A stretch of DNA of 64,000 nt, taken from IMG/VR virus record IMGVR_UViG_3300043410_001471, positions 62,001 to 126,000 of that record; one strand, given 5' to 3'. A program made the position numbers and the translations under genes. Numbering within the stretch: position 1 is the first letter of the stretch; each line of letters begins with the position of its first letter. Shown piece by piece: positions 29,279-51,426 of this stretch. Under the pieces are notes generated by a model. That model was not told the DNA's origin and did no database searches. It saw only the letters and a program-made list of their open reading frames with translations.

Positions 29279-29491
29279 ATGGCTACATCAAAAAAACAAG
29301 AAGAAACGCAAGAAACATCCGAATTATTACTATTAGAAGCTAAGAAAGTTAAAGCATTGGAAAAAATTGCAAACTCTTTAGATGCACTTACTGTTTGGTT
29401 TGAAGAAATCGATAAAGAAGAGTGGGGAGAGAGATTGCAATGGTATTTAGCAGAATTTCATAAGAAGATAGTGGAGGAGGATGCAAACTAA
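29279..29491 (+). CDS. Small helical hypothetical protein (70 aa)
   Basis: Directly downstream of the promoter; overlaps the next start. Confidence 0.65.
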   Translation: MATSKKQEETQETSELLLLEAKKVKALEKIANSLDALTVWFEEIDKEEWGERLQWYLAEFHKKIVEEDAN

Positions 29492-30893: not shown

Positions 30894-32299
30894 TGAAATT
30901 AGGAGTTTGCGTACCATATAGAAATAGAGAAGAACATATGAAAGTGTTCGTTCCTCATGTTTCAAAGTTTTTAGAAGAAAGAGGTATTGAACATACTATT
31001 TATCTTGCACATCAATGCGATGATAAACTTTTCAATAGAGGATTAATGAAGAACATTGCTGCAAAGCATGCATTTGATGATGGATGCGATTATATAGTTT
31101 GGCATGATATTGATATGGTGCCCGAAGATGATAGTTGTGATTATTCATTTCCAGAAGTAAACCCACAACATATCGCTGTTCGTATCTCACAATCGGATTA
31201 TCAGTTAAAGTATGAGGAATACTTTGGTGGAGCAGTAATATTTTCAAAAGAACAAGTTGAAAGAACCAATGGGTACTCAAATGATTATTGGGATTGGGGA
31301 ATGGAAGATGATGATTTATTTTGGAGATGTGTAATGGAGGGATATGCTGAAAAAACTCAATTAGAATATAATAAAGAACAAATTGTAGCATATTTCAATG
31401 GTGTGGATTCTAAAATAGAATTTAGACCTTCAAGAGAACAAAAAAATTGTTTATCTAATTCACATACTGTTTCCATATTAGTTAAAGCTGAACAGCAAAT
31501 AGAGAAAGTTCCCATTTGGTTGATTGGTGATAACAATAGACAATTTATGGAATATCCAATTTTCAGAAAACCTGGATACGATTGGGGATTATCTTTTAAT
31601 AATAGTAGAGCATATACAATGCAACTTTGGGATAGAATGAAAGGACATTTGTATCAATGGATTAAACGATATGAGAATCAATGGAGTTGGATTACTATGG
31701 CAGTTGATGCTGAAAATAAAAAAATACATTTTTATTTGAATGGAAAAGAATCTGATGCACGATTAGGAACGGGAACTCAATCTCCATTGTTATACAATGA
31801 ACCATTAAAAAGATATGGTATGGAGCCATTTTATGTTGGGTATTCCAAATCCCCCGTTGAATCATATTTTAAAGGAGCGATTGCATCGATAGTAATGTGG
31901 GATAGATGTTTAAACCCTAAAGAAATTAAAAATATACACACTAAATTTCCAGAAGATGGATTAGTATTGGATTTATTTACAATGGCATTGGATTTTGGGG
32001 AATCTACAAATGTTGAAACTAAAAAGGAATTAATAGAAATTCCACATACGATTTTACCATATAGAAGAGATGGTAAGTTTAAATGTTTACCACATCAGAC
32101 AGAAGGATTAATCAAAGAAGGTGGAATTGATAAATGGGCCAAAGGAGAAACAACTGCACAAAATGAAAGAAGATATGTTTTACAAATGCAGCAAGGAAAT
32201 ATTGATTATAAATCCGATGGTATTAATTCTATGAAATACGAATTATTATCAATTGATACTATATATAATAAACATAAACTTATAAATGTTAAAGCATAG
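30893..32299 (+). CDS. GT7 glycosyltransferase paralog with inserted LamG-like domain
   Basis: VCVPYRNR, FNRGLMKNI, WHDID, YFGGA, GYSNDYWDWGMEDDD; C-terminal SDGINSMKYEL. Confidence 0.88.
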   Translation: MKLGVCVPYRNREEHMKVFVPHVSKFLEERGIEHTIYLAHQCDDKLFNRGLMKNIAAKHAFDDGCDYIVWHDIDMVPEDDSCDYSFPEVNPQHIAVRISQSDYQLKYEEYFGGAVIFSKEQVERTNGYSNDYWDWGMEDDDLFWRCVMEGYAEKTQLEYNKEQIVAYFNGVDSKIEFRPSREQKNCLSNSHTVSILVKAEQQIEKVPIWLIGDNNRQFMEYPIFRKPGYDWGLSFNNSRAYTMQLWDRMKGHLYQWIKRYENQWSWITMAVDAENKKIHFYLNGKESDARLGTGTQSPLLYNEPLKRYGMEPFYVGYSKSPVESYFKGAIASIVMWDRCLNPKEIKNIHTKFPEDGLVLDLFTMALDFGESTNVETKKELIEIPHTILPYRRDGKFKCLPHQTEGLIKEGGIDKWAKGETTAQNERRYVLQMQQGNIDYKSDGINSMKYELLSIDTIYNKHKLINVKA

Positions 32300-35404: not shown

Positions 35405-35950
35405 ATGAGTAATAAGTGGGATGAATTTATAGAAACACCATCTAAGAAATTTGGATATCAAGTTCCATCATTTCAACCATCAGTATTCAGAGAATATAGA
35501 GGTGAAATATTTACAACTTTCCATTCGGAAGAACATCCGGTAATGAGACACATTCATTATGATAAAAGTGAGATATCAATTCACGGAAGATTTTCTCGTT
35601 CATACAAAGGAGTATTGAGAGGATTACATTGGGATAAAAAAACATGGAAGTTAGTTCAAGCAGTAGTAGGTGATATCTACTTAGTTGTATTGGATATGAG
35701 AGAAACTTCACCAACTTATGGAGATTGGGAATCGTACATCATATCCGAAAGATTAAGAAATCAAGTACTGATTCCACCGGGATTTGCAAATGGACATTAT
35801 GCATTAACTGATTGTATGTTTCACTATAACCTATTTTACAAAGATGGTTATGTAGATGCAGATGAGCAAGGTGTAGTTAAATGGAATGACCCGGAGTTTC
35901 AAATGGAATGGCCAACCGATAAACCTATATTACAAAAAAGAGATAGATAA
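35405..35950 (+). CDS. rmlC: dTDP-4-dehydrorhamnose 3,5-epimerase family (cupin)
   Basis: FREYRGEI, SYKGVLRGLH, GDIYLVVLDMR..SPTYG.W, IPPGFANG, WNDP...EWP. Confidence 0.92.
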   Translation: MSNKWDEFIETPSKKFGYQVPSFQPSVFREYRGEIFTTFHSEEHPVMRHIHYDKSEISIHGRFSRSYKGVLRGLHWDKKTWKLVQAVVGDIYLVVLDMRETSPTYGDWESYIISERLRNQVLIPPGFANGHYALTDCMFHYNLFYKDGYVDADEQGVVKWNDPEFQMEWPTDKPILQKRDR

Positions 35951-36783: not shown

Positions 36784-37535
36784 AATACGATTTAATAGTA
36801 GGATTCGGATGTAGTTTTACAGAAGGAGGTGGTTTGGATAATCCAAATGTTTATAAGTTTATCAATAATATTGAAGATAGCACTATTGGATTTTTACACC
36901 CCGATATAATACAATTTAAATATGATAATAATTTTATATCGTATTTATCTGAATTGTATAAATGTGATTATATAAATTTTGGAGAATCGATGTCATCAAA
37001 TGATTTAATATTTCAAAAAATATATGATTATTTTAAAGAAAAAATTATAAACAAACGAATTCTATGTATTGGACAAGTCACAATGTTTACAAGACAAAAT
37101 GTTTATTATGATTTTACTAAGGAAACTTTAAAATTAAATAGAGTAGAATTTAGTGACCCACCATTTAATAATGATGATAAATACAAACCACTATATCAGT
37201 ATTATGAAAATTACTTATCATTTATTTATAATGAAGATGTAGTAGTTTCTAATTTAGAAAAAAATATTGAATTATATGATAATTGGTTAAGATATAAAGG
37301 CGTAGATACATTGTGGTTATCATATGATGGTAATCCAAATCAATTCATAGAATCGGATAAATTTATTAAATTTGATGGTGATAATTTGGGAGCATGGGCT
37401 GAAAAAAATAAATTGAGAATTATGGATATACCCAATTGCCCGGTGCCAGACCCACATCTGAATTTAGAAGGTCATATGGAAGTTGCAAAATTAATTTATC
37501 AAAAAGTAAAAAATAGAAAAACAAAAGTTATATGA
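36780..37535 (+). CDS. SGNH-like protein (paralog 2 of 5)
   Basis: GFGCSFTEG, SSNDLI, DPHLNLEGH. Confidence 0.65.
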   Translation: MKYDLIVGFGCSFTEGGGLDNPNVYKFINNIEDSTIGFLHPDIIQFKYDNNFISYLSELYKCDYINFGESMSSNDLIFQKIYDYFKEKIINKRILCIGQVTMFTRQNVYYDFTKETLKLNRVEFSDPPFNNDDKYKPLYQYYENYLSFIYNEDVVVSNLEKNIELYDNWLRYKGVDTLWLSYDGNPNQFIESDKFIKFDGDNLGAWAEKNKLRIMDIPNCPVPDPHLNLEGHMEVAKLIYQKVKNRKTKVI

Positions 37536-38167
37536 TACGAAATTTAGAAAACTACAATAAGGTAGAAAATGTGCATGAATCCTTTACACCACAAGATTTA
37601 ATTGATTTTGAAAATCTAATAGTAAAACATTGGGAAGATGCAAAAATCAGAGGACCTATACATTTATCGAATGGAAATGAAGAACAATTAATTGAAATAT
37701 TTAAAAGAATTTCAAAAAATGATTGGGTATTTAGTACATGGCGTTCTCATTATCATGCATTATTAAAAGGGGTATGTCCTGTTTGGATTGAAGAAGAAAT
37801 TCTAAAAGGTAAATCTATTACATTATGTAATTTAGATGAAAAATTTTATTCATCTGCTATTGTGGGAGGTACTCTATCAATTGCATTAGGAGTTGCAATG
37901 GGAATTAAAGCAAAAGGTAGTGATGAAAAGGTTTGGTGTTTTATTGGAGATATGTCTTTTGAAAGTGGTATATTCTACGAAGTTCATAAATATGCAAGAA
38001 ATTTTGATTTACCATTATATTTTGTAGTAGAAGATAATGGTGTTTCTACATATACACCAACCGCAGTAACTTGGAATACTAAAAGAGATATCCCATCGGA
38101 TGTTATACATTATAAGTATGATTCAAAATTTCCACATTACGGAACTGGTAAATGGATAGCATTTTAA
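37532..38167 (+). CDS. TPP-dependent enzyme, E1-alpha-like subunit (shortened)
   Basis: STWRSHYH, SAIVGG, GDMSFESG...VVEDNG (GDG-x-N TPP motif). Confidence 0.88.
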   Translation: MIRNLENYNKVENVHESFTPQDLIDFENLIVKHWEDAKIRGPIHLSNGNEEQLIEIFKRISKNDWVFSTWRSHYHALLKGVCPVWIEEEILKGKSITLCNLDEKFYSSAIVGGTLSIALGVAMGIKAKGSDEKVWCFIGDMSFESGIFYEVHKYARNFDLPLYFVVEDNGVSTYTPTAVTWNTKRDIPSDVIHYKYDSKFPHYGTGKWIAF

Positions 38168-40784: not shown

Positions 40785-42107
40785 TTGGTTATGCTACAAA
40801 GTGATGACACTTTATTTAATTTTTATTTTGAAAATGTTGATAAATTTGGAAGAATATTACCAAATAATTTATCAAAAGAAGAATTAAATCACTTTAATAG
40901 ATTATGTTCCGATAACTACGATTGGCAATCATTTGTTTCCGATGGATATTCTACAAAACTTTTAAGTTCATTTTACATAGCATATTGTAAGAATAAAAAA
41001 TTATCAACTACTAATATAAACGATGATAATTTAATTTATTTATGCGAAAGTTTTGAACCATCCCCATACATTAACTCATTTATAGAAAATATGAGTTCCG
41101 ATGTTTTCACTAAATTAAAAAATGGAAACATACGAATCGTATTTAATTGGGCTGGAGAAGCTTTATATGATGAACGAATTAATTCTAGTTTGGAATTGGA
41201 ATTTGCAAAATATAATTTGAATGTAAATTCAATTTTTATATTAACAAGTGCAAATAATATAAAAAATACATCTAATATAAATTATATATCAGACCATTTT
41301 TTCCTACAAAATTCAGCAAATTCTTTAAAATTATTTTTAACACAAACTAGTGCTAAAAATATGAATAATGATTTTGATTGGAATTCGGAAATTGTCAGTT
41401 ATGATATTTTTACAAAGTATAAATCTAAGCATTTCATTTCTTTAAATAGGCAAATAAGTAGACCTCATAGATATGCATTTGGATTATTTGTAGAAAAACA
41501 TAATTTATGGGATAAGGGGTATTTTAGTTTTTTACATATGATGGATAATGTTACACAATGTTTTGAAACGCTTTCTATGAATGATTTCAATTCATATGGA
41601 GATATACATGATTCATTTAAATCGAAGATACCAATACATTTGGATACGATACATCTTTTGGATAAAACTAAAATGCATAATTTTAGAGTATCTGAAATTT
41701 ACTATAAACCAGCTTACGAAGATTCTGTTATAAACATTGTTACGGAAACGGCATTTTCTAATAATAAAGTATTCATGTCAGAAAAAACATTTCATCCGAT
41801 TATTAATTTACAACCATTTATTATATTTTCATCAAATGGTCATTTAGCAGAATTAAAAAGATTGGGATTTAAAACATTCGATGGATTCATAGATGAAAGT
41901 TATGATATGGAGGAAAACTCACAAAAAAGATTTAAAATGGTATGTGATGAAATATTAAGATTATCTCAAATGGATATTTCAGAACTAAATAAATTATACT
42001 TATCTTATAAAGAAATTTACATTCATAATAGACAACATTTATTAAAATTTACCAATTATGATTATTACTACAATTGTTTACAAAAAATAAAAAAATATGG
42101 AATTTAA
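40785..42107 (+). CDS. Putative glycosyltransferase, distant GT10-like family (paralog 2 of 3)
   Basis: FISLNR..RPHR; INIVTET...FMSEKTFHPI.NLQPFII...LKRLGFKTF..IDESYD. Confidence 0.5.
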   Translation: MVMLQSDDTLFNFYFENVDKFGRILPNNLSKEELNHFNRLCSDNYDWQSFVSDGYSTKLLSSFYIAYCKNKKLSTTNINDDNLIYLCESFEPSPYINSFIENMSSDVFTKLKNGNIRIVFNWAGEALYDERINSSLELEFAKYNLNVNSIFILTSANNIKNTSNINYISDHFFLQNSANSLKLFLTQTSAKNMNNDFDWNSEIVSYDIFTKYKSKHFISLNRQISRPHRYAFGLFVEKHNLWDKGYFSFLHMMDNVTQCFETLSMNDFNSYGDIHDSFKSKIPIHLDTIHLLDKTKMHNFRVSEIYYKPAYEDSVINIVTETAFSNNKVFMSEKTFHPIINLQPFIIFSSNGHLAELKRLGFKTFDGFIDESYDMEENSQKRFKMVCDEILRLSQMDISELNKLYLSYKEIYIHNRQHLLKFTNYDYYYNCLQKIKKYGI

Positions 42108-43095
42108 CGGAAAAAAAGTTTTAGTTACTGGAGCAAATGGATTAGTAGGATTACCAGCAGTTAAGAAATGTTTAGAAGAGGGTGCTGAAAAAGTATATGC
42201 GGTAGACCTTAAATTTGGTGATAATCTTAAATTATTACAATCACAATATAGTGATAAAATAGTTTTAGTACAAAGTGATTTAACATATCTTTCCCATTGT
42301 GAAAATTTATTCACATTGGATAAAATTGATATTGTACTACACATTGCAGGAGTCAAAGGTTCACCGGCTCGTTCATCTACACAACCTGCGGATTATCTAT
42401 TCCCAATGTTGATGTTCAATACCAATATGATTAAAGCATCATTTGATGCGAAGGTTGATTGGTTTGTATATCTTTCATCGGTTGGAGTTTATAAACCAGC
42501 AGATGTAATGAACGAAGAAGATATTTGGTCACAAGAAGAAACTTGGGCATCAACTCCATCTCGTTTAGATTGGCATCCAGGTTGGACAAAAAGAATGGGA
42601 GAACTTACTTTGGATTCATTACGAGTTCAATATGGTTGGGATAATTGGACTGTAATTAGACCTTCTAACATATATGGAACAAACGATAATTTTGCGCAAG
42701 ATGCAACGGTAATCTCTTCTAACATTTGGAAGTTATTCAATGTAGAGGGGGATGATATGATATGTTGGGGCGATGGTTCATCCAAAAGAGATTTTGTATT
42801 TGGTGATGATGTGGCACAAGCATCAATTGATGTAGTTAAAAAAGAAGTTAGAGATATTATCAACTTTGGATGTGCAGAAGCAGTATCAATCAAAGATACA
42901 ATTGAAACTATTGTTGAATGTTATACTGAAATTACGGGTAAAACTAAAAACATAGTTTGGGATTCTACAAAAACAAACGGAGACCCTATTAGATGTTTAG
43001 GTTCTAAAAAACAAAAACAATATGGTATTTTACCACAAACTACATTAAAAGAAGGATTAACAAAATCAATTTTAGAATATAAAAGTAGATTATAA
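42097..43095 (+). CDS. GDP-fucose-synthase-like extended SDR lacking the canonical catalytic Tyr
   Basis: TGANGLVG, LSSVGVY, RPSNIYG.NDNF, WGDGSSKRDF; PGWTK stands where YxxxK is expected. Confidence 0.85.
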   Translation: MEFNGKKVLVTGANGLVGLPAVKKCLEEGAEKVYAVDLKFGDNLKLLQSQYSDKIVLVQSDLTYLSHCENLFTLDKIDIVLHIAGVKGSPARSSTQPADYLFPMLMFNTNMIKASFDAKVDWFVYLSSVGVYKPADVMNEEDIWSQEETWASTPSRLDWHPGWTKRMGELTLDSLRVQYGWDNWTVIRPSNIYGTNDNFAQDATVISSNIWKLFNVEGDDMICWGDGSSKRDFVFGDDVAQASIDVVKKEVRDIINFGCAEAVSIKDTIETIVECYTEITGKTKNIVWDSTKTNGDPIRCLGSKKQKQYGILPQTTLKEGLTKSILEYKSRL

Positions 43096-44111
43096 TGAAA
43101 CATTTAGTAGCAGCTGGTTGTTCGTTTTCATCGTTGGTAAAGCCAAATGTGGATATGCCAACCGAATACGATATACTTAAAAAAGATAAAACTACATGGA
43201 CTTGGATTGAATGGATACAATATTACGAAGGAGATTCTTATCAAATTCACAATTATGGATGCCCTACAAACGATAATGATACCATTGTAGAGAGTGTATT
43301 GTATGGTATTAATAAACTTATAAAGCAAGGAGTAGATAAATCCGATATAGAGGTGATAATTCAATGGTCTGCTGTGAGTAGAAATTCATTTTTTATACCA
43401 AAAGGAATGGTTGATAGAGCAAAACTGAATGTAACTACTCATACAAACGATTTTATTTCAGAAAAACGATATAAATACGAACATGGGTTCAAATATTTAA
43501 CGGGTGGGTATAATAGAACAAATAATTTAGATGAATTAAATGATATCGTATTTAATTATTTGGGGTTAGAATACTCAAATGAAGAAAGAATAATAAGTTT
43601 TCTAAAAAATATAATTTTTATATCAAGTTTTTGTAAATCAACTGGTATAAAGTATAAATTCTTTACTATGGGTAATAACTTTTCATCAAATATATTTACA
43701 AAATACGAAGATATAAATAAAACACTTAAAAGTCAGCAAGAACCACATATGGATATCAGACCTGATATTTTAGAGAAAAGACTTGTCGGAGAAAATTGGA
43801 ATGCATCTACATTAATCGATATCCCATATATTAATTACTTATTTGAATTAATTGATTTAAATGATTTTTGGTTTTATGAAATAGAAAATTATCATAAATT
43901 TGGAGGTGCAATTGAGTGGTCTGTTGGCGAATGGGGAAGTGGTGTTAAAGATGATTCTGGACTTGGATTAAGCGAATTGGTATATTTTGAAATGGAAGGA
44001 TTATCTGATGAAGAAAAAGCTGATTATTTTAAACATCGTTCTTATGGACATCCATCATCTTTAATGTGGAGGAAGTTTTATTTTGAAGTATTAAAACCAA
44101 ATTTTCTATGA
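43095..44111 (+). CDS. SGNH-like protein (paralog 3 of 5)
   Basis: AAGCSFS, TNDNDTI, IIQWS, GHPS; close paralog of the next gene. Confidence 0.6.
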   Translation: MKHLVAAGCSFSSLVKPNVDMPTEYDILKKDKTTWTWIEWIQYYEGDSYQIHNYGCPTNDNDTIVESVLYGINKLIKQGVDKSDIEVIIQWSAVSRNSFFIPKGMVDRAKLNVTTHTNDFISEKRYKYEHGFKYLTGGYNRTNNLDELNDIVFNYLGLEYSNEERIISFLKNIIFISSFCKSTGIKYKFFTMGNNFSSNIFTKYEDINKTLKSQQEPHMDIRPDILEKRLVGENWNASTLIDIPYINYLFELIDLNDFWFYEIENYHKFGGAIEWSVGEWGSGVKDDSGLGLSELVYFEMEGLSDEEKADYFKHRSYGHPSSLMWRKFYFEVLKPNFL

Positions 44112-45193
44112 AATATATAATTACAAATGGTTGTTCTTTTACTAGAGCTGGTAGAATAAACATTGATGTAACCGATGATAATTTTATAAAGGAAGATGAT
44201 ATGTCTAATAATGGGGATTCATCGGAATTTAACTATTATCCGCATTGGATACAATTATTAAACCCTGAATTGAAAGTTATAAATTTGGGTAATGTTACTA
44301 ATGATAATCAAGTTATCGCTAGAAACATAATATACAAAATTGAAAAAATGAAAAAGGATGGAATCGAACCATCCGATATATCAGTTGTAGTACAATGGTC
44401 ATCTTTTTATAGAAATGCATATTTTGTATCACCATCCAAACAATTAGAAAATACAAAATTAAAATTACCACAACATCGTAAAAGATGGGATGATGATTAT
44501 GCACACATTAATGATTTTGTAGAAGAAAAGAATGAGGTGGGTGAATACGGATACTATTTCTTATCAGGGGGATTTGGGATGGACCATGTAAAAAATCCAA
44601 TGAAAGAATTCGCATATTTAAATTTAGGACATCTACATTCATATGAAGAAAGATTACTTATATTTTTGGAAGCAATAGTGATGTTACAAATGTATTTTAA
44701 ATCAAATGGTATAAAATATAAAATGTTTAATATAGCTAATAATTTTTCAGATGAATATGTTTTGAATTGTGTGAATGGTGGTGGATTTCCAATGTTTAAA
44801 CCTGATAATTCTAAAAACAATGAAATGTATGAAGTTATCAAAAACAAATACATACCAAACACTTGGAATTCTCAAATGCTATATTTTAAAAATCCACATT
44901 TATCCTATTATTATGATATGATTGACTGGAGTGGATTTTGGTTCTATGAAGAAGAAAATTTACATAAATTTGGTGGTGTAATTGAGTGGGGGATACGAAA
45001 TTTTGATATAAATTATAGAGATGGTATAAATGCAAACATATTATTTATGGAACAATATAGAAGAGATGTTATTCATACGGAAGAAAGTTTGATTGATATT
45101 TATCAAGACGGTCATTGTCCATTGGGGCACATATCATCTGCATTATATAGAAAATTTGTAAAAGAAATCGTATCAACATGGAATCTTTATTAA
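44108..45193 (+). CDS. SGNH-like protein (paralog 4 of 5)
   Basis: TNGCSFT, TNDNQVI, VVQWS, GHIS; shares FWFYE.EN.HKFGG.IEW with 43095. Confidence 0.6.
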   Translation: MKYIITNGCSFTRAGRINIDVTDDNFIKEDDMSNNGDSSEFNYYPHWIQLLNPELKVINLGNVTNDNQVIARNIIYKIEKMKKDGIEPSDISVVVQWSSFYRNAYFVSPSKQLENTKLKLPQHRKRWDDDYAHINDFVEEKNEVGEYGYYFLSGGFGMDHVKNPMKEFAYLNLGHLHSYEERLLIFLEAIVMLQMYFKSNGIKYKMFNIANNFSDEYVLNCVNGGGFPMFKPDNSKNNEMYEVIKNKYIPNTWNSQMLYFKNPHLSYYYDMIDWSGFWFYEEENLHKFGGVIEWGIRNFDINYRDGINANILFMEQYRRDVIHTEESLIDIYQDGHCPLGHISSALYRKFVKEIVSTWNLY

Positions 45194-45843
45194 AAAAAGA
45201 ATTATTTGAAAACGGATATGTATCATTTCATTTAAAAGATTTAGATGAAACTATTTATGAAAATCTTAAAAGTATATTTCCAATTGGTAATTTAAAGCCG
45301 GAAATGTTTAAAAACCTCAAACATGCTATACCAATGGATGTTGGATATGAATACGATAACAAATCATTGATGGATGTTTCATTCCAAAAACTTAATACTA
45401 TAAAGAGGAATATTTTAGATAAATTGGAAGAACATAATAATCAGTTGTGGTTTTATGGTTGGTTATATGAAGTCAATACTGAAAATAATCCATTTGATAA
45501 ACTTATAAAACCAATATTTAATAAATTTTACGATACAACGATAACAACAGCTAATTCACAAGTTACAATGTATAATGATGGGTGTTATCTTAGAAATCAT
45601 CGTGATGGTAATTATGAGTTTGATGGTGGTACTAGAAATTGTGTAATATTGATTTATCTATCTACCGATTATGAAAACGGAAAAGGTGGAGAGTTGGTAC
45701 TATCATCCGATAATGATAATGAATTAGTAGTAGAACCCATATATGGTAATGTTGCTGTAATGGATTTTACAAAACATGATGCCTGGCATAGAGTTGAAAA
45801 GGTTATAGATTACAATCGATATTGTTTTATAAATTTTTGCTAA
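45178..45843 (+). CDS. 2OG-Fe(II) oxygenase (prolyl-4-hydroxylase-like)
   Basis: TMYNDGCYL..HRDG (HxD), ILIYL, GGEL, WHRV, R. Confidence 0.85.
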   Translation: MESLLKKELFENGYVSFHLKDLDETIYENLKSIFPIGNLKPEMFKNLKHAIPMDVGYEYDNKSLMDVSFQKLNTIKRNILDKLEEHNNQLWFYGWLYEVNTENNPFDKLIKPIFNKFYDTTITTANSQVTMYNDGCYLRNHRDGNYEFDGGTRNCVILIYLSTDYENGKGGELVLSSDNDNELVVEPIYGNVAVMDFTKHDAWHRVEKVIDYNRYCFINFC

Positions 45844-45844
45844 T

Positions 45845-46462
45845 ATGAATGAATCGCATAAAATTCAATTATTTAAAGAAGGTTATACTACATTTAATTT
45901 ATACGAATTAAATGATTCAGAAATCAATCAATCTTTAAATGAATTGCAAACATTATCTAAAAAAGAATTTAAAAATTTAAGATATAAAACCATAAATAAT
46001 ACAAATGATGGTGTCTTTATAAAAGATTCTTTTGAAAATTTGGAAGAAATAAAAAATTCTATAAAAAAAACCAATCTTTACGAAATGTGGTATTATAACG
46101 ATGTAATACCAAAAAACAAATATAATAAGCAATTATTGAATAAAATAAAGCAATTTTTTTATAATGAAGATGTGAATGATTTTAATCATGCAACATATAT
46201 TACAATGTATAATGATGGGTGTGTTTTAATAGAGCATAATGATGGGTTTAATCCTAATTCAAAATATAAATGCGTAATACTAATTTATTTAAATGATGAA
46301 TCGGAAATTCAAACCGGTGGAGAATTGATATTAGATGGTAATATATTGATTAAACCTGTTATAGGAAATGTTGCTATAATGGATTTTACAAAGAATGATA
46401 TCAAACATGGTGTAAAAGAAGTTAGTGGATATCATAGAAAATGTTATCTAAATTTTTGTTAA
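45845..46462 (+). CDS. 2OG-Fe(II) oxygenase paralog
   Basis: TMYNDGC.L.EHNDG, ILIYLN, GGEL, HGV, RKC. Confidence 0.85.
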   Translation: MNESHKIQLFKEGYTTFNLYELNDSEINQSLNELQTLSKKEFKNLRYKTINNTNDGVFIKDSFENLEEIKNSIKKTNLYEMWYYNDVIPKNKYNKQLLNKIKQFFYNEDVNDFNHATYITMYNDGCVLIEHNDGFNPNSKYKCVILIYLNDESEIQTGGELILDGNILIKPVIGNVAIMDFTKNDIKHGVKEVSGYHRKCYLNFC

Positions 46463-46486
46463 TATCAAAAAAAATTAGTATCTTTA
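46455..46486 (+). promoter_or_regulatory. Bacteroidota-type promoter
   Basis: TTTG (46455-58), 20-nt spacer, TATCTTTA (46479-86), 16 nt before ATG 46503. Confidence 0.7.
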
Positions 46487-46502
46487 TAAATTAATATAAC
46501 AT

Positions 46503-48110
46503 ATGCAACAACCATTTAAAATATACACATTAGAATCAAATGACCAAAAGGTTTTAAAGAAAGTTTTGGAATCGTCTGTTAATATCGAAAATATACGAGC
46601 TTCATCAGAAGGAGTTGGTAATAGAAGTTATGAACTTCCAACCGATATGGTGAAAACATTGGAAAATTGTGAATTAGAAAAAACCAATATCATATCAAAT
46701 GATTCTAAATTAAGTCAAATTTGGTATACATTAAATAAGCCTGAAAATAAGATAGAAGTTGAAAAAATGTTAGAAAAGCATTTTAAACAATTATATCCCA
46801 ATATAACTTATCCTTTGGAAATTTTATGGAATGTTACAATGTATACAGAGGGGTGTTTTATTGAAGAACATATAGATGGTAGAGATGCCGATAGAATGGC
46901 TGGATTTTTATTTTATTTAAATGAAAGTTATGATAGTGATAATGGTGGTCTATTAAGAGTTATAGACCCAAATACAAATGAAATAACAAATATTGTTCCG
47001 GAATTCGGACAAGCAATATGTATAGATTATATAAACAATGAGGTATCACACGAAGTGACACCTGTTAAACAAGGAAAAAGATTAGCAATTTGCGCATTCA
47101 TTCATAAAAGAAATCATATGGGAAAAAGTTACAAAATTTTAGTTACTGGAGCAAGTGGATTTATAGGTTCACAATTGGTTAAAAGTTTAAAAGAAAGAGG
47201 ATATTGGAATTTACGAACAACTTCATTTAGTAGAGACTTACCAAATACAATCAAAGATAAGGAATCAATTGAACATTTTAAAGGAGATTTACAAGATGCA
47301 AACTTTTGTAAGGAAGTTTCCGAAGGTGTAGATGTAGTATTTCATTGTGCAGCAAATACATCAAACGCATTAGATACAAAACAAAATCCTTTATTACATG
47401 TTACTCCAAATGTAGAAATGAATGTAAATTTGATGGAACAAAGTTGGAGAAATGGAGTTAAGAAGTTTATGTTTATTTCATCTAATACTGTATACCCAGA
47501 TATGAAGGACGCATTTTGTACCGAAGATATAAATATCCATGCAACTCCTACATTTCCAATATATGGGGCGGTTGGTAATATGAAAAGATATGGTGAATTA
47601 CTTTGTGAATATTTTTCAAAACAAATCCATAATCCAATGCAATGTGTAATTATTAGACCATCAAATGCATTTGGACCAAATGATAAATTTGATTTCGAAA
47701 AGTGTCATGTTACACCTGCAAACATTCGTAAAGTTGCAGATGGTTTAAATCCAATTCCGGTATGGGGTGATGGTAGTGAGGTAAGAGATTTACTTCATGT
47801 TGAAGATATGGCGGATGGTATGATATTTTTAGCAGAAATGGTAGATAAATATTCTATTTACAATGTTTGTTATGGAGAAGGATTTAGTGTAAATGAAGTA
47901 TTAGGATGGATTAAAGAAGCTGATAATAATGATAATCCTGTCGAATATGTAAATAATAAAGCTCCAATGATTCCTGTTAGATTAATGTCATCTAAAAAAA
48001 TAAATGAGTTGGGGTGGAAACCAAAAAGAGATTTAAAGCAAGCTCTTAAAGAAACATTGGAATGGTATAAAGAACATAAACACTTATATAATCCAAACTC
48101 AAAACCATAA
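46503..48110 (+). CDS. In-frame fusion of a 2OG-Fe(II) oxygenase and a GDP-fucose-synthase-like SDR
   Basis: N-half EHIDG, FLFYLN, GGLL, HEV, R; C-half (from Met at 47118) TGASGFIG, FISSNTVY, VGNMK in place of YxxxK, RPSNAFG, WGDGSEVRD. Confidence 0.85.
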   Translation: MQQPFKIYTLESNDQKVLKKVLESSVNIENIRASSEGVGNRSYELPTDMVKTLENCELEKTNIISNDSKLSQIWYTLNKPENKIEVEKMLEKHFKQLYPNITYPLEILWNVTMYTEGCFIEEHIDGRDADRMAGFLFYLNESYDSDNGGLLRVIDPNTNEITNIVPEFGQAICIDYINNEVSHEVTPVKQGKRLAICAFIHKRNHMGKSYKILVTGASGFIGSQLVKSLKERGYWNLRTTSFSRDLPNTIKDKESIEHFKGDLQDANFCKEVSEGVDVVFHCAANTSNALDTKQNPLLHVTPNVEMNVNLMEQSWRNGVKKFMFISSNTVYPDMKDAFCTEDINIHATPTFPIYGAVGNMKRYGELLCEYFSKQIHNPMQCVIIRPSNAFGPNDKFDFEKCHVTPANIRKVADGLNPIPVWGDGSEVRDLLHVEDMADGMIFLAEMVDKYSIYNVCYGEGFSVNEVLGWIKEADNNDNPVEYVNNKAPMIPVRLMSSKKINELGWKPKRDLKQALKETLEWYKEHKHLYNPNSKP

Positions 48111-48829
48111 TGGATAGTATATTATTTTCAGGTTGTTCTTACACATATGGAGAGGGATTGTGGAGAGAAACAGGTGATACACATCAAAATTCTGAAAATC
48201 AAAAATATCTTTTAGAAAATAGATGGACAACAAAAGTTTCAAATCATTTTAATCTCAATCAAATTTCAAAAGGGTACAATGGTGGAAGTAACATTGGTTC
48301 TATTAAATTTGTAAGAGAAGAATTTGATGCAACTACTTGGAATGGGAATGATATTAAATTGATATTATTTCAAACTACGCAATTCAATAGACACAAATTT
48401 AGTATAGATGAACAAATATCCGAATTAGAAAAATTTGTAAAAGAATTTGAAAATAAAAATATACCTGTAAGATTTATACATTGGCAATGGGTTGATATAA
48501 CGGATGAAGAGATGGAAATATTCTTAAATAGAAAGCATGATTTTTTAGGAAAATTAAATCCATCATTTTTTCCAGATAAAACAATTCCACCATATGATGG
48601 TAATAAATTAACTTCTAAAATAATAAGAGATAGAACAATCAGAATTTTAGATAAATTTAATTTTCACGAAATGGTGTATCATAACGATGCACATAAAAAA
48701 GGAACATTATCTAACAAATATACATTGGCTGGAAAATTAAGATGTGAAGATTTCCATATGAATCAAGAAGGGCATGATATTTTAACAAATGAAATAATTA
48801 ATTATATAGAAAAAAATAAGTTATTATGA
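48110..48829 (+). CDS. SGNH-like protein (paralog 5 of 5)
   Basis: FSGCSYTYG, GGSNIGS, DFHMNQEGH. Confidence 0.65.
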   Translation: MDSILFSGCSYTYGEGLWRETGDTHQNSENQKYLLENRWTTKVSNHFNLNQISKGYNGGSNIGSIKFVREEFDATTWNGNDIKLILFQTTQFNRHKFSIDEQISELEKFVKEFENKNIPVRFIHWQWVDITDEEMEIFLNRKHDFLGKLNPSFFPDKTIPPYDGNKLTSKIIRDRTIRILDKFNFHEMVYHNDAHKKGTLSNKYTLAGKLRCEDFHMNQEGHDILTNEIINYIEKNKLL

Positions 48830-49365
48830 ATACACCTCAATATTCTCCTTACAAAGATGCACTAACAAATGCTATGACTGAATTAGCAAAATTAGATGAT
48901 AGTATCTTTATTGGACAACAAATAGTTTATGCTGGAAATCCTATGTCTACAACATTAGGAGAAGTTCCAAAAGAAAAAATGATTGAAGTTCCTGTTATGG
49001 AAGAAACTCAAATGGGAATGAGTTTAGGATTGGCAATGACTGGTAAACGAGTAATAACATTTTATCCTCGTTGGGATTTTATTATTTCAGCAACCAATCA
49101 ATTAGTAAATCATTTGGATAAGTTTGAAATAATGACTGGTAAAAAGCCAAATGTAATAATTCGTTTAGGTAAAGGTTCTGATAAACCATTAGACCCTGGT
49201 CATCAACATAAAGGAAATTATTTTGAAGAGTTTAAATCTTTATGCAAGAACATAGAATTTCACGATTTAAAAACTCCTTCGGATATCGAATCGGCATATA
49301 AATATGCTACAAAAGAAGGTGGTGTGCATTTATTAGTAGAATACCCCGAATTATATTATAGTTAA
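48826..49365 (+). CDS. TPP-dependent enzyme, E1-beta/transketolase pyrimidine-binding subunit (no C-terminal domain)
   Basis: FIGQ...IE.PV.EETQMG...GLAM.G, NQLVNHLDK, GHQH; only 179 aa. Confidence 0.85.
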   Translation: MNTPQYSPYKDALTNAMTELAKLDDSIFIGQQIVYAGNPMSTTLGEVPKEKMIEVPVMEETQMGMSLGLAMTGKRVITFYPRWDFIISATNQLVNHLDKFEIMTGKKPNVIIRLGKGSDKPLDPGHQHKGNYFEEFKSLCKNIEFHDLKTPSDIESAYKYATKEGGVHLLVEYPELYYS

Positions 49366-49994
49366 TGAAAGAATTGATATTAGAAAATGGTAAAGTCGTT
49401 TATGATGAGATATACGATGGTGGTGGTAGCTCTTTTGGTGTAAATGCACTTAGAGATGAGAGAGTAAAATCCGTAATAAAAAGAGGAAACATATTGGAAA
49501 TGTGTTCTGGTCCAGGCTTTATGGGGTTTTTTTTAAATTTTGAAGGATTTGCAGATTATTTGGTTTTATCTGATATAAATGATGTACATGAATCATACAT
49601 TAGAGAAACTATTCTACAAAATAATTTGATGAATACTAAATTCATTCAATCAGATGGATTTAAATCATTCTATATACATAATGTGTTTGATACGATTGTT
49701 ATGAATGCACCACATTATGCATCTCCTAGAAATGGAGGATATGTTAGTAAAGAGGAAGAACTTATTTGTTTAGACCAAGATTTAGAATTCCACAAACATT
49801 TTTTTAAAACGGCAAAAAATTATTTAAAAAAAGATGGAGTTATCATATTAATTGGTAATATGGGCGGAATCCAACCACAAGAAATAATTGATATGGCTGG
49901 CGATGAATATTTATGTAATCTAATAGCATGTGAAAGATATGGTTGGATTAGAGATTCTAGGTTTTATGTTTTAGAAATAAAAGTAAATGGGTAG
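49365..49994 (+). CDS. Class I SAM methyltransferase (HemK/PrmC-like, probable N-methyltransferase)
   Basis: LEMCSGPG motif I, SDIN, SDGF, IVMNAPHY (NPPY-like motif IV). Confidence 0.8.
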   Translation: MKELILENGKVVYDEIYDGGGSSFGVNALRDERVKSVIKRGNILEMCSGPGFMGFFLNFEGFADYLVLSDINDVHESYIRETILQNNLMNTKFIQSDGFKSFYIHNVFDTIVMNAPHYASPRNGGYVSKEEELICLDQDLEFHKHFFKTAKNYLKKDGVIILIGNMGGIQPQEIIDMAGDEYLCNLIACERYGWIRDSRFYVLEIKVNG

Positions 49995-51426
49995 TAAAGA
50001 AAAAATAGTAGTTGGGTATGATATATTGTTTCCATACAATGAAGTTCCCAATTGTCTAAATCCAAAATATTTAGAATTTGCATATCATACCGATTGGACC
50101 TTCGATACATCGGAACATTATTTTAAAAATAAATTAAAAGCCATATGGCCGGTATTCAATGCAAGATTCAATGTACAATTAAATGATGAAGATGGCAACC
50201 CTGGTTATTTTGGAATAGAAACCCGCTCGGTTCATAGTATTATCAGAGAAAGAGAAAGAGGTAATTGTTATGATTGGTATTATTTAATTGAACCATATGG
50301 TGATATTGCTAATTTTTTAGGATTGGATAAATTTTCAAATAATATACCATTTAGTAAATTAATTCCATCAAAAACATTAGAAGAAATACGAGATTGGGGT
50401 GGAAAATTAGTTATTAACTATGTAATAGATGGTAATATAAATAAATTTCAATTAATAAAATTGTATAAATGTTTATTAGATTTAAATATTCCATTTAATA
50501 AGATTATCATATGTCATAATGATTTTAATTTAGAAAAAATGATGAAGCCAATATTTGGTGAAGATTTTCCAAAATTGATTCATTTTTGTTGGTCATTAAA
50601 TTCGAAAGCTGAAGAATACTTTAAGAAATTAAATCAAGATGATTATAATTTTTGGCAAGATGAAAATAAAAAAGCATCTTATAACTTTCTAACAACTGAA
50701 GAAGTATCCAATTTTGATAATAAAATTTACAAATTCAATAATTTCAATAGAAGAATTAGATTTCATAGAGCTGAAGTTTTATATTTTTTATGGAAAAATA
50801 ATATGATTGAAAATAATTTAATTAGTTATGATATGAATTTGTTTTTGGATGGTCCATTGGATGATATGAAATCTAGATTGAATGAAAATGAGTATAATGA
50901 ATTCATAAATTATATTCAACAAACATCTCCAAGAATAATAGATTATGATAATTTGGATAATGTATGGGGGTACGGATTTGAAAATAAAGAAGTATATTTG
51001 AATTCATTGATATCAATTGTTTCAGAAACTTTATTTTATGAAGAGAGTGGATATCTATCCGAAAAGATATGGAAACCAATAGTTCATGGACATCCTTTCA
51101 TATTAATAGGACCTGCAAATTCTTTGAAATTTTTGAAAGAAGAATTTGGATTCAAAACATTTGAACCAATAATAAATGAAAATTATGATTCCGAAGAAAA
51201 TCCTAAAAAAAGATTAGAATTAGTTTTGAATGAAATAGCTAGATTAAATAGTTATTCAATAGATGAATTGAAGGAAATGATAAAAGAATTAATACCTATT
51301 ATAAAGCATAATAAAAAACTTATGTATGATATTGGTAGTAAACATATATCATTAGACCATTATCATTTTTTAAAATTAACAGGTAGAGAAAAGTTAATAC
51401 CAAAACCAAAAATATCAATATTATGA
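49987..51426 (+). CDS. Putative glycosyltransferase, distant GT10-like family (paralog 3 of 3)
   Basis: FNNFNRR.RFHR; ISIVSET...YLSEKIWKPI..GHPFILIG...LKFLK..FGFKTF..INENYD. Confidence 0.5.
   Translation: MGSKEKIVVGYDILFPYNEVPNCLNPKYLEFAYHTDWTFDTSEHYFKNKLKAIWPVFNARFNVQLNDEDGNPGYFGIETRSVHSIIRERERGNCYDWYYLIEPYGDIANFLGLDKFSNNIPFSKLIPSKTLEEIRDWGGKLVINYVIDGNINKFQLIKLYKCLLDLNIPFNKIIICHNDFNLEKMMKPIFGEDFPKLIHFCWSLNSKAEEYFKKLNQDDYNFWQDENKKASYNFLTTEEVSNFDNKIYKFNNFNRRIRFHRAEVLYFLWKNNMIENNLISYDMNLFLDGPLDDMKSRLNENEYNEFINYIQQTSPRIIDYDNLDNVWGYGFENKEVYLNSLISIVSETLFYEESGYLSEKIWKPIVHGHPFILIGPANSLKFLKEEFGFKTFEPIINENYDSEENPKKRLELVLNEIARLNSYSIDELKEMIKELIPIIKHNKKLMYDIGSKHISLDHYHFLKLTGREKLIPKPKISIL

What the first reader, a model, noticed from the sequence alone, without database searches (positions are those of the whole stretch)
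45178..48110. Triplicated 2OG-Fe(II) oxygenases, the third fused in frame to a nucleotide-sugar SDR
Seen: three tandem oxygenases. TTACAATGTATAATGATGGGTGTT is identical at 45563-86 and 46200-23 and partly kept at 46834, indicating local duplication. The third reads through ...IHKRNH-MGKSYKILVTGASG with no stop. Inference: the fusion links hydroxylation to sugar-nucleotide chemistry. Alternatively these P4H-like enzymes hydroxylate Pro-rich virion segments as glycan attachment sites.
Basis: partly seen in the sequence, partly recalled or inferred. Interest (0 to 1): 0.6.

Follow-up and report, generated by a model that had tools for sequence, protein, structure and literature searches.

The report
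Phage oxygenase fused to sugar reductase
A 245-kb freshwater phage carries three iron/2-oxoglutarate oxygenase genes inside a large sugar-tailoring gene island; the third is truly fused to a nucleotide-sugar reductase-like enzyme, and relatives fuse a sister oxygenase to a second such enzyme, so these common but unexplained phage oxygenases most likely modify sugars, not proteins.

Summary
Three co-directional PF13640 oxygenase ORFs lie at 45178-45843, 45845-46462 and 46503-48110. The third runs without a stop into an extended-SDR domain, 535 aa in all.

The fusion is not an assembly error. Contigs from two independent studies span the junction, and 12 protein clusters (65-84% identity) and 9 viral loci keep it. 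Their SDR halves form one clade, which fits a single origin.

"Local duplication" is misleading. The paralogues share only 26-38% amino-acid identity and belong to old lineages. The exact repeat is 23 nt, not 24.

Main new result: the oxygenase sits between two GDP-fucose-synthase-like SDR paralogues, SDR-A and SDR-B. It has fused independently to either one. Ox-SDR-B is the form here. SDR-A-Ox is the form in at least 113 clusters elsewhere. Other relatives keep separate, tightly spaced or overlapping genes, and some lack the oxygenase altogether.

All three oxygenases keep the HxD...H...R catalytic residues. SDR-B has an invariant Val where the YxxxK tyrosine should be, so the database name "GDP-L-fucose synthase" is not supported.

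Best reading (about 0.55): an optional hydroxylase module that tailors a nucleotide-sugar or sugar-derived intermediate. Prolyl hydroxylation of virion proteins is not excluded (about 0.15). The substrate is unknown.

The parts
42097..43095 (+). SDR-A, a free-standing extended SDR (332 aa). It is the partner paralogue that relatives fuse to an oxygenase.
   Evidence: PF01370 at 114.8 bits. 40% identical (E 2e-85) to the SDR part of the SDR-A-Ox fusion P0239. An SDR matching the SDR-B profile only weakly (about 90-135 bits) lies upstream of SDR-B in most loci; I take it to be SDR-A, but orthology was tested only for P0239.
45178..45843 (+). ox1, a free Fe(II)/2OG oxygenase (221 aa), lineage A1.
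   Evidence: PF13640 at 43.3 bits. H141, D143, H204 and R214 are present. Lineage from the tree.
45845..46462 (+). ox2, a free Fe(II)/2OG oxygenase (205 aa). It is a divergent sister of the ox1 type, seen only in the window, L005 and L011/L029.
   Evidence: PF13640 at 30.1 bits. 38% identical to ox1. Distribution and placement.
45563..45585 (+). 23-nt exact repeat, first copy. The second copy is at 46200-46222 and a degenerate third lies near 46833.
   Evidence: It encodes the conserved TMYNDGC strand just before the HxD motif.
46503..47117 (+). ox3, the N-terminal oxygenase domain (aa 1-205) of the fusion protein, lineage B.
   Evidence: PF13640 at 51 bits. H123, D125 and H183 are invariant and R193 is nearly invariant in 90 homologues. 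AF2 model has pLDDT 96.9. Closest fold is PPHD 4iw3 at Z 18.2.
47094..47135 (+). Fusion junction, ...AFIHKRNH / MGKSYK..., with the relic start codon of the SDR at 47118-47120.
   Evidence: There is no stop codon. M206 is kept in the fused homologues. In unfused L015 and L016 an in-frame TAA sits at this spot, 1-2 codons before the ATG. Independent contigs span it. AF2 pLDDT for residues 201-210 is 88.
47118..48110 (+). SDR-B, the C-terminal extended-SDR domain (aa 206-535) of the fusion protein. It resembles GDP-mannose 3,5-epimerase and GDP-fucose synthase but has a non-canonical active site.
   Evidence: PF01370 at 163.6 bits. Best PDB hit is 2c59 at E 7e-29. The profile alignment puts invariant Val357 at the Tyr of YxxxK, with invariant Tyr354, Lys361 and His402.
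35405..35950 (+). RmlC-like sugar 3,5-epimerase (cupin), part of the same island.
   Evidence: PF00908 at E 9e-33.
37532..38167 (+). TPP-binding E1-alpha-like protein. Its partner is the E1-beta-like protein at 48826-49365.
   Evidence: PF00676 at E 9e-14. PF02779 at E 1.3e-7. The same pair flanks the SDR-A-Ox fusion in L095.
49987..51426 (+). 479-aa protein of unknown family. A homologue is fused N-terminally to SDR-A-Ox in P0239.
   Evidence: BLASTP E 3e-13, 34% identity over 119 aa. No Pfam match.

Best explanation
What it is. The three oxygenases are active Fe(II)/2-oxoglutarate dioxygenases of a phage-specific branch of the PHD/P4H-like family PF13640. They work as optional tailoring hydroxylases or oxidases inside a roughly 26-kb phage island that builds and decorates an unusual sugar. 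The product could be a glycan or a sugar-derived metabolite.

Shown here:
- The oxygenase gene sits between two GDP-fucose-synthase-like SDR paralogues, SDR-A and SDR-B.
- In the window's clade, a lost stop codon in the A-rich spacer welded oxygenase lineage B to the N-terminus of SDR-B.
- In another, much larger set of phages, oxygenase lineage A2 is welded to the C-terminus of SDR-A.
- The catalytic residues of the oxygenases are conserved.

Inferred:
- The oxygenase domain oxidises a C-H of the nucleotide-activated sugar intermediate that the SDRs handle. This could be hydroxylation of a deoxy position, or oxidation of a carbinol or amino carbon to a ketone.
- The tethered SDR, using NAD(P)H, then reduces or epimerises that product.
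- The fusion fixes 1:1 stoichiometry and passes on a labile keto-sugar.
- ox1 and ox2 (lineage A1, sister to the SDR-A-fused lineage) would act at other positions or steps, giving a multiply oxidised sugar.

Presence or absence of the oxygenase between otherwise near-identical neighbours fits diversification of a surface or virion glycan.
For: (1) The fusion is real and under selection. Independent contigs span the junction. Twelve clusters at 65-84% identity and 9 viral loci keep both domains and the linker. The fused SDRs form one clade (SH-aLRT 99, one change).

(2) Unfused relatives keep the adjacency. In L015 and L016 the oxygenase ends AICAFIHKK-stop and the SDR starts 1-2 codons later in the same frame. 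In L008 the stop and start overlap (ATGA). L063 has a short spacer.

(3) There is an independent fusion of the opposite polarity. P0214 (561 aa) and P0239 (969 aa) are SDR-A followed by Oxy_3. Of the 120 best homologues of P0214, 113 carry both PF01370 and PF13640, down to 44% identity and on contigs up to 267 kb. The SDR part of P0239 is 40% identical to the window's SDR-A, and the gene after it is 47% identical to the window's SDR-B. The two fused oxygenases fall in different lineages.

(4) L007 and L008 encode the identical SDR-B protein with the same listed neighbours apart from a shorter SDR-A. They differ by the oxygenase gene, which marks it as an optional tailoring step.

(5) The oxygenases look catalytically competent. 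H123, D125 and H183 are invariant and R193 is nearly invariant in 90 homologues, and the same residues are present in ox1 and ox2.

(6) Enzymes of this fold do act on sugar phosphates. PasI 9ei7 (Z 15.0) and PolD 9blq (Z 14.6) are among the top structural neighbours.

(7) The surrounding island is sugar chemistry: four SDRs, an RmlC-like cupin, two GT7-like glycosyltransferases, three radical-SAM proteins, an E1 alpha/beta-like TPP pair, a HAD phosphatase, methyltransferases, and a cytidylyltransferase-like N-terminus.

(8) The AF2 model of the 535-aa protein has pLDDT 90.3 and pTM 0.78, with pLDDT 88 across the linker. That hints at a fixed domain arrangement.

(9) Published context: Iyer et al. 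2021 (PMC7824862, section 3.4.10) describe jumbo-cyanophage clusters combining epimerases, cupins, HAD, a HemK-like methylase and 2OGFeDO hydroxylases.
Against: - No substrate has been identified.
- The nearest solved folds and sequences are protein prolyl hydroxylases: PPHD 4iw3 (Z 18.2, E 5e-6), the PHDs, OGFOD1 and PBCV-1 vCPH.
- No PF13640 enzyme acting on an NDP-sugar is known to me.
- SDR-B lacks the canonical catalytic Tyr by alignment, and SDR-A appears to lack it too on my own reading of its sequence (not tested by alignment). Their redox chemistry is therefore uncertain.
- Complex prediction on the unfused L015 pair gave no verdict.
- Related phages carry further Oxy_3 genes far from the SDR module, so not all of these oxygenases need share this role.
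- About 60 of 80 related loci have SDR-B without any adjacent oxygenase.
- No RNA data were available.
Confidence: 0.55

Rival explanations
1. Protein hydroxylase. The oxygenases hydroxylate Pro (or Lys, Asn, Asp) in virion or host proteins, for example Pro-rich linkers, to create O-glycan attachment sites. The island's glycosyltransferases then use those sites. The fusion to an SDR only co-localises the hydroxylase with the supply of sugar donor.
For: The closest solved relatives are prolyl hydroxylases: PPHD/EF-Tu 4iw3 at Z 18.2, the PHDs, OGFOD1/Tpa1, and the viral collagen P4H 5c5t at Z 15.4. A Pro-rich PxPxP linker followed by a Gly8 run exists in ORF 5924-7192, next to baseplate genes. 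Two GT7-like transferases lie in the island. From general knowledge, mimivirus L230 and the Skp1 P4H/Gnt1 system couple hydroxylation to glycosylation.
Against: Two independent fusions join the oxygenase to nucleotide-sugar SDRs, not to glycosyltransferases or structural proteins. The oxygenase lies between two SDR genes. No collagen-like G-X-Y run longer than four repeats was found in the genome, and only one short Pro-rich linker. A homologue of the protein that carries that linker is present in relatives whatever their oxygenase arrangement; whether they keep the Pro-rich stretch itself was not checked. The fold class also includes sugar-phosphate enzymes.
Confidence: 0.15
2. Secondary-metabolite pathway. 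The island makes a small amino-acid- or sugar-derived molecule rather than a glycan. The oxygenases hydroxylate its non-sugar part, and the SDRs act as ketoreductases on that scaffold.
For: Iyer et al. 2021 proposed this for a similar cyanophage cluster with a HemK-like methylase, carbamoyltransferases, 2OGFeDO and HAD. The window has a HemK-like methyltransferase at 49365-49994. It also has a HAD phosphatase, radical-SAM enzymes and a TPP pair. Relatives carry a carbamoyltransferase.
Against: Both SDRs are of the extended NDP-sugar type, with a full C-terminal substrate domain and best matches to GME, GMER and DdahC. An RmlC-like epimerase and glycosyltransferases are present. This rival overlaps the best explanation, because the oxygenase would still act on a sugar-derived small molecule.
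Confidence: 0.15
3. Carrier-domain model. The SDR domains have lost redox catalysis (no YxxxK tyrosine) and serve only as NDP-sugar-binding modules that present the substrate to the oxygenase.
For: In three independent alignments the catalytic Tyr position is an invariant Val in SDR-B. On my own reading of its sequence (not tested by alignment), SDR-A has neither the Tyr nor the GMER His.
Against: SDR-B is very strongly conserved, with 80% mean column identity. The conserved residues include Ser, Lys361, His402, an invariant Tyr354 one helical turn before the canonical site, and the GxxGxxG motif. That pattern suggests a shifted rather than a dead active site. Most relatives have SDR-B with no oxygenase to serve.
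Confidence: 0.08
4. Artefact. The read-through is an assembly or sequencing error, or a recently broken stop codon of no consequence.
For: Unfused relatives differ only by a TAA in an A-rich spacer.
Against: Contigs from three studies span the junction without indels. Twelve clusters from ENA, NCBI and JGI keep it at 65-84% identity, and they form one clade.
Confidence: 0.01

Closest known systems
Sugar- and amino-acid-modification gene clusters of jumbo (cyano)phages, such as the P-SSM2 'LPS' cluster and the S-SSM6a-type second cluster (Iyer et al. 2021, PMC7824862, section 3.4.10)
   Same: Both are large phage islands. Both hold 1-4 NAD-dependent epimerase/dehydratase paralogues, cupin sugar isomerases, HAD phosphatases, a HemK-like methylase, glycosyltransferases and 2OGFeDO hydroxylases. 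Both are polymorphic between related phages.
   Different: Here the host is probably not a cyanobacterium: TerL is 55% identical to that of Flavobacterium phage immuto. The oxygenase is physically fused to an SDR, in two independent architectures. I found no mention of fusions in the section read or in term searches of that paper. The best cyanophage SDR matches are only about 28-31% identical.
GDP-L-fucose synthase (GMER/Fcl), GDP-mannose 3,5-epimerase (GME), and the Campylobacter heptose 4-reductases DdahC/MlghC
   Same: Same extended-SDR fold: TM to target 0.77-0.89 and E down to 5e-33 with a profile. Shared features are GxxGxxG, the Ser of the triad, the Lys, and the NDKFD-x-EK-x-HV-x-P motif holding the GMER-type His, shared with DdahC.
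   Different: The NCBIfam Fcl score is 142.6 against a cut-off of 500. The Tyr of YxxxK aligns with an invariant Val. GMER Cys109 / GME Cys145 is Thr329 here. The domain is fused to a dioxygenase.
PHD/P4H-like prolyl hydroxylases: Pseudomonas PPHD 4iw3, human PHD2, OGFOD1/Tpa1, PBCV-1 vCPH 5c5t
   Same: Same DSBH fold (Z 15-18). Same HxD...H triad and Arg for 2OG. All belong to PF13640.
   Different: Only 15-18% identity. The subfamily is almost exclusively viral and narrow: 225 of 1.84 billion representatives at E <= 0.001. It is embedded in, and fused to, sugar-nucleotide enzymes. No evidence was found for a protein substrate.
PasI (9ei7) and PolD (9blq), Fe/2OG oxygenases of nucleoside-antibiotic pathways that act on high-carbon sugar phosphates
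   Same: Same fold subclass (Z 15.0 and 14.6). The substrate in the 9ei7 title is a sugar acid phosphate. This shows PHD-like scaffolds can work on phosphosugars.
   Different: No detectable sequence relationship beyond the fold. Those enzymes are not fused to SDRs, and their gene clusters are different.
KanJ/KanK in kanamycin biosynthesis (from memory, as an analogy only)
   Same: A 2OG dioxygenase oxidises a sugar carbon to a ketone and an NADPH-dependent reductase then reduces it. That is the two-step logic proposed here.
   Different: Those are separate proteins acting on an aminoglycoside rather than an NDP-sugar. Homology was not tested here.

Membership tests
Fe(II)/2-oxoglutarate dioxygenase, Pfam PF13640 (2OG-FeII_Oxy_3) | Profile score above the gathering cut-off of 27 bits | tested here: met
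   ox1 scores 43.3, ox2 30.1 and ox3 51.0 bits.
Fe(II)/2-oxoglutarate dioxygenase, Pfam PF13640 (2OG-FeII_Oxy_3) | HxD...H iron triad plus a basic residue that binds the 2OG C5 carboxylate | tested here: met
   H123, D125 and H183 are invariant and R193 is nearly invariant in 90 homologues. The same four residues are present in all three window paralogues.
Fe(II)/2-oxoglutarate dioxygenase, Pfam PF13640 (2OG-FeII_Oxy_3) | Double-stranded beta-helix fold | tested here: met
   AF2 pLDDT 96.9. Z 18.2, rmsd 2.4 over 171 residues to 4iw3.
Protein prolyl 4-hydroxylase (PHD/P4H) | Hydroxylates peptidyl proline | not testable with these tools
   There is only fold and weak sequence similarity. The gene context points elsewhere.
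Extended SDR, NAD-dependent epimerase/dehydratase (PF01370) | Profile match and an N-terminal GxxGxxG Rossmann motif | tested here: met
   163.6 bits over aa 212-456. GASGFIG is present.
Extended SDR, NAD-dependent epimerase/dehydratase (PF01370) | Ser/Thr-Tyr-x3-Lys catalytic triad | tested here: not met
   Lys361 and Ser327 align. The Tyr position is invariant Val357 in alignments to GME 2c59, DdahC 7anh and TM0509 4zrm. An invariant Tyr354 lies three residues upstream. Whether Tyr354 substitutes in 3D could not be checked, because no coordinates were available.
GDP-L-fucose synthase Fcl/GMER (NCBIfam NF047922). This is the name JGI gives to homologues. | Equivalog score of at least 500 bits | tested here: not met
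   142.6 bits.
GDP-L-fucose synthase Fcl/GMER (NCBIfam NF047922) | Cys/His acid-base pair for 3,5-epimerisation (residue numbers recalled from the literature) | tested here: inconclusive
   The His is kept (H402, in EKCHVTPA, which aligns with EKSHVLP of DdahC). Thr329 sits where GME has Cys145. The position of GMER Cys109 is inferred from the GME alignment only.
Phage sugar/amino-acid-modification cluster as described by Iyer et al. 2021 | Co-clustered epimerase paralogues, cupin isomerase, HAD phosphatase, HemK-like methylase, 2OGFeDO hydroxylases and glycosyltransferases | tested here: met
   All are found between about 25.5 and 51.5 kb of the window. A carbamoyltransferase was seen only in relatives.

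The most novel reading that the evidence does not exclude
Ox-SDR-B and SDR-A-Ox would be a previously uncharacterised class of bifunctional nucleotide-sugar tailoring enzymes. In them, a P4H/PHD-like Fe/2OG hydroxylase acts directly on an NDP-sugar, a substrate class not known for PF13640. It hands the product to an SDR that has a shifted Y-x2-V-x3-K active site, producing a new hydroxylated or branched sugar on a phage-directed glycan. If so, many of the unexplained 2OG oxygenases of aquatic phages may be sugar hydroxylases.
Probability: 0.4. Interest if true: 0.7.

Novelty: new variant of a known kind. Interest (0 to 1): 0.5.

Why it matters
By general knowledge, 2OG-Fe(II) oxygenases are among the most frequently repeated genes of unknown role in marine and freshwater phages. 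Two independent fusions, of different oxygenase lineages to two different nucleotide-sugar SDR paralogues, give a concrete hypothesis that can be tested by expression: these oxygenases tailor activated sugars.

If confirmed, three things follow:
- A new substrate class for the PHD/P4H-like fold.
- A new SDR active-site variant.
- A route to unusual hydroxylated sugars in phage-made glycans, which may affect host recognition, exclusion of superinfecting phages, or virion shielding.

It also corrects the automatic database name "GDP-L-fucose synthase".

Tried and rejected
- DNA search of the 2.9-kb region against cultured phage records found nothing. Protein search found only SDR matches at 31% identity or less and no fused homologue.
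- The search for related loci with the mixed alignment A2 failed for lack of a conserved block. It was repeated with the single protein.
- Complex prediction on the unfused L015 oxygenase + SDR pair gave 'no answer' (scores 0.00, 0.62, 0.00). This counts neither for nor against binding.
- The scan of cellular genomes for SDR-B found a single contig, in a Pelagibacterales MAG. That contig carries the same phage-like island. No cellular family emerged that could hint at function.
- I tried to relate oxygenase presence to the Pro-rich protein across related genomes. The test was uninformative: all four genomes searched hold 2-4 Oxy_3 genes and a homologue of that protein.
- Contexts of distant free-standing homologues P0127 and P0128 were on contigs too short to help, apart from showing tandem oxygenase pairs.
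- Literature searches found no paper on oxygenase-SDR fusions or on 2OG oxygenases acting on NDP-sugars.
- Recent gene duplication or conversion as the origin of the triplication is rejected: paralogues are 52-58% identical in DNA and fall in separate old lineages.
- Assembly artefact is rejected.
- In the tree my script overwrote the P0387 row with a short fragment. Its placement there should be ignored.
- No alternative genetic code was used or needed.

Full report
**Setting**

The window is bases 62001-126000 of a 245,436-bp IMG/VR virus record with direct terminal repeats. It is AT-rich, at 25-37% GC, and almost every long ORF lies on the + strand.

Baseplate-wedge, large-terminase and portal homologues show a T4-like myovirus. 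The terminase is 55% identical to that of Flavobacterium phage vB_FspM_immuto and 52% to that of Microcystis phage Mel-JY01. Near-identical DNA occurs in freshwater, aquatic and some marine metagenomes from several studies.

**The observation**

Three tandem ORFs are present:
- 45178-45843, 221 aa
- 45845-46462, 205 aa
- 46503-48110, 535 aa

All three match PF13640 above its cut-off. The third also matches PF01370 (Epimerase) over aa 212-456 at 163.6 bits. The read-through ...FIHKRNH-MGKSYKILVTGASG is as described, and the former SDR start codon lies at 47118-47120.

The exact repeat is 23 nt, not 24. It lies on the most conserved motif, and the same paralogues in relatives do not share it.

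The paralogues are 38% and 26% identical in protein and 52-58% in DNA. Orthologues in related phages are 66-84% identical in DNA. The copies therefore predate these phages.

**Is the fusion real and conserved?**

Contigs from the probable source run and from two other studies span the junction with no indel there.

Among 5.8 billion clustered proteins, eleven full-length clusters (P0002-P0007, P0009-P0013; 505-543 aa, 65-84% identity), plus the truncated P0008, carry both domains. They keep the linker FIHKxNxM and the internal Met.

In IMG/VR, loci L005, L011/L029, L012, L013, L014, L017 and L018 are fused. On a tree of 87 SDR-B sequences the nine fused rows form one clade (SH-aLRT 99). One change explains the trait.

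**How the fusion arose**

In L015 and L016 the orthologous oxygenase ends AICAFIHKK-TAA. The SDR then starts one or two codons later in the same reading frame. In L063 and L008 the two genes are in different frames, and in L008 stop and start overlap as ATGA. A small change in the A-rich spacer therefore makes or breaks the fusion.

L007 and L008 encode the identical SDR-B protein (P0053) with the same listed neighbours apart from a shorter SDR-A. They differ by the presence of the 223-aa oxygenase. About 60 of 80 related loci have no oxygenase next to SDR-B. The oxygenase is an optional add-on.

**The main new result**

I searched all 1.84 billion representatives with the oxygenase domain alone. 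Only 225 hits reached E <= 0.001, and nearly all are 200-270 aa.

The only two long proteins among the 150 listed, P0214 (561 aa) and P0239 (969 aa), are again fusions with an Epimerase domain. In these the order is reversed: SDR first, oxygenase last.
- Their SDR is the other paralogue. P0239 aa 430-760 is 40% identical (E 2e-85) to the window's free SDR at 42097-43095, which I call SDR-A.
- The gene following P0239 is 47% identical (E 2e-104) to the window's fused SDR-B.
- The N-terminal 435 aa of P0239 resemble the window's 479-aa ORF at 49987-51426.
- The neighbourhood holds the same E1-alpha-like, E1-beta-like and radical-SAM genes.

This SDR-A-Ox architecture is common. Of the 120 best homologues of P0214, 113 carry both Pfam domains, down to 44% identity and on contigs up to 267 kb.

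A tree of oxygenase domains separates three lineages:
- Lineage B: the window's ox3, the other Ox-SDR-B fusions, and the free L015/L016 genes.
- Lineage A1: the window's ox1 and ox2.
- Lineage A2: the SDR-A-Ox fusions, plus the free L008 and L068 genes.

Two different oxygenase lineages have thus fused independently to two different SDR paralogues, within a conserved order SDR-A / Ox / SDR-B. This is strong Rosetta-stone evidence that these oxygenases work with the nucleotide-sugar SDRs.

**The oxygenase domain**

The family keeps H123, D125 and H183 invariant and R193 nearly invariant. ox1 and ox2 have the same residues.

The AF2 model of aa 1-205 is very confident, at pLDDT 96.9. Its nearest solved folds are:
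- Protein prolyl hydroxylases: PPHD 4iw3 (Z 18.2), the PHDs, OGFOD1/Tpa1, and PBCV-1 vCPH (Z 15.4).
- Sugar-phosphate enzymes: PasI 9ei7 (Z 15.0) and PolD 9blq (Z 14.6).

Fold alone therefore does not decide between a protein and a sugar substrate. The nearest ESM Atlas clusters are 93-100% viral.

**The SDR domain**

SDR-B is closest to GDP-mannose 3,5-epimerase (E 7e-29), GDP-fucose synthase and the Campylobacter heptose 4-reductase DdahC. With DdahC it shares the NDKFD-x-EK-x-HV-x-P motif.

It scores only 142.6 bits against the Fcl cut-off of 500. In three alignments the YxxxK tyrosine corresponds to an invariant Val357. Invariant Tyr354 lies one turn earlier on the same helix, Lys361 and His402 are invariant, and Thr329 sits at the GME Cys145 position.

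The JGI name "GDP-L-fucose synthase" is therefore not supported. I could not inspect coordinates, so I cannot tell whether Tyr354 takes over the catalytic role.

The full-length model has pLDDT 90.3 and pTM 0.78, with pLDDT 88 across the linker. No listed Foldseek PDB match exceeded a query TM-score of 0.54, i.e. about the size of the SDR domain alone.

**Context**

From about 25.5 to 51.5 kb the window encodes the following:
- methyltransferases
- two GT7-like glycosyltransferases
- three radical-SAM proteins
- four SDRs
- an RmlC-like cupin
- an E1 alpha/beta-like TPP pair
- a HAD phosphatase
- a HemK-like methyltransferase

A 1562-aa protein follows, beginning with a cytidylyltransferase-like domain.

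This matches the kind of jumbo-phage cluster that Iyer et al. 2021 described. They proposed that such clusters decorate surface polysaccharide or make a secondary metabolite. I found no mention of fusions in the section read or in term searches of that paper.

**Interpretation**

Most likely (about 0.55), the oxygenases are optional tailoring hydroxylases or oxidases acting on the nucleotide-sugar or sugar-derived intermediate that SDR-A and SDR-B handle. The fusion then couples oxidation to the next reduction or epimerisation.

Shown:
- the architecture, its conservation and its independent recurrence
- the conserved catalytic residues
- the sugar-enzyme context

Inferred:
- the substrate class
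- the order of the steps
- any channelling between domains

Rivals:
- Protein prolyl hydroxylation that creates glycan attachment sites, about 0.15. A Pro-rich linker exists at ORF 5924-7192, but nothing ties the oxygenases to it.
- A secondary-metabolite pathway, about 0.15. This partly overlaps the best explanation.
- SDRs acting as non-catalytic carrier domains, about 0.08.
- Artefact, about 0.01. This is refuted.

Complex prediction gave no verdict, and no RNA runs hold the region.

**Novelty**

Phage sugar islands with 2OG hydroxylases are known. The fused architectures are in public databases under automatic names, but I found no description of them in the literature I could search. I rate this a new variant of a known kind, with moderate interest. 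It turns a widespread phage gene of unknown role into a testable enzyme hypothesis.

Noticed in passing
window 43095-44111, 44108-45193, 48110-48829: Three paralogous ORFs (338, 361 and 239 aa) start with a G-C-S-[FY] motif that recalls block I of SGNH/GDSL hydrolases. One matches DUF6071 weakly (E 1.2e-4, below cut-off). They interleave with the SDR and oxygenase genes and may be sugar O-acyl esterases or transferases.
   Followed up: no
window 42097-43095: On my reading, SDR-A has neither the YxxxK tyrosine (it reads ...HPGWTKRMGE) nor the GMER-type His. Yet it is conserved across relatives and is the partner in the common SDR-A-Ox fusion.
   Followed up: partly
window 5924-7192 (aa about 365-410): A Pro-rich PxPxP linker (13 Pro in 40 aa) is followed by a run of eight Gly, in an ORF beside baseplate genes. 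Homologues exist in four related phage genomes.
   Followed up: partly
window 29481-32299: Two tandem glycosyltransferases match the GT7 (beta-1,4-galactosyltransferase-like) N and C domains. One also carries a Laminin_G_3/ConA-like domain. This is an unusual family for a phage.
   Followed up: no
window 51569-56257: A 1562-aa ORF begins with a cytidylyltransferase-like domain (E 8e-5); the rest is unassigned. The region is richer in GC (0.34-0.37) and has strong AT skew compared with the island.
   Followed up: no
L007 versus L008 (Lake metagenome contigs): The SDR-B protein is identical and the listed neighbouring genes are otherwise the same apart from a shorter SDR-A. The loci differ by the presence of a 223-aa oxygenase gene between SDR-A and SDR-B. 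This is a natural presence/absence polymorphism.
   Followed up: partly
P0057, P0357, P0372, P0376, P0385 (581-637 aa): Long proteins lacking PF13640. P0057 has two Epimerase stretches, which suggests an SDR-SDR fusion; the other four were not checked for domain count. If all are SDR-SDR fusions, this would be a third fusion type within the module.
   Followed up: no
L097 (VHCC01000006.1, a MAG labelled Candidatus Pelagibacterales): This is the only hit for SDR-B among 185,579 species genomes. It is a 23-kb contig at 27% GC carrying the same island synteny, all on one strand. It is probably a phage contig binned with an AT-rich host-like genome, or it may be a hint to the host.
   Followed up: partly
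G000:C1:48498-48749 (outside the window): A fourth PF13640 oxygenase (168-aa ORF) lies elsewhere in the same phage. Related genomes hold 2-4 such genes, several of them far from the SDR module.
   Followed up: no
L092-L094: Distant free-standing homologues also occur as tandem oxygenase pairs (227 + 226 aa). Tandem duplication therefore recurs in this subfamily.
   Followed up: no
whole record: Size, habitat and the Bacteroidota-like terminase affinity resemble the 'moraphages' (aquatic jumbo phages up to 307 kb with predicted Bacteroidota hosts; PMC12619734). Membership was not tested.
   Followed up: no
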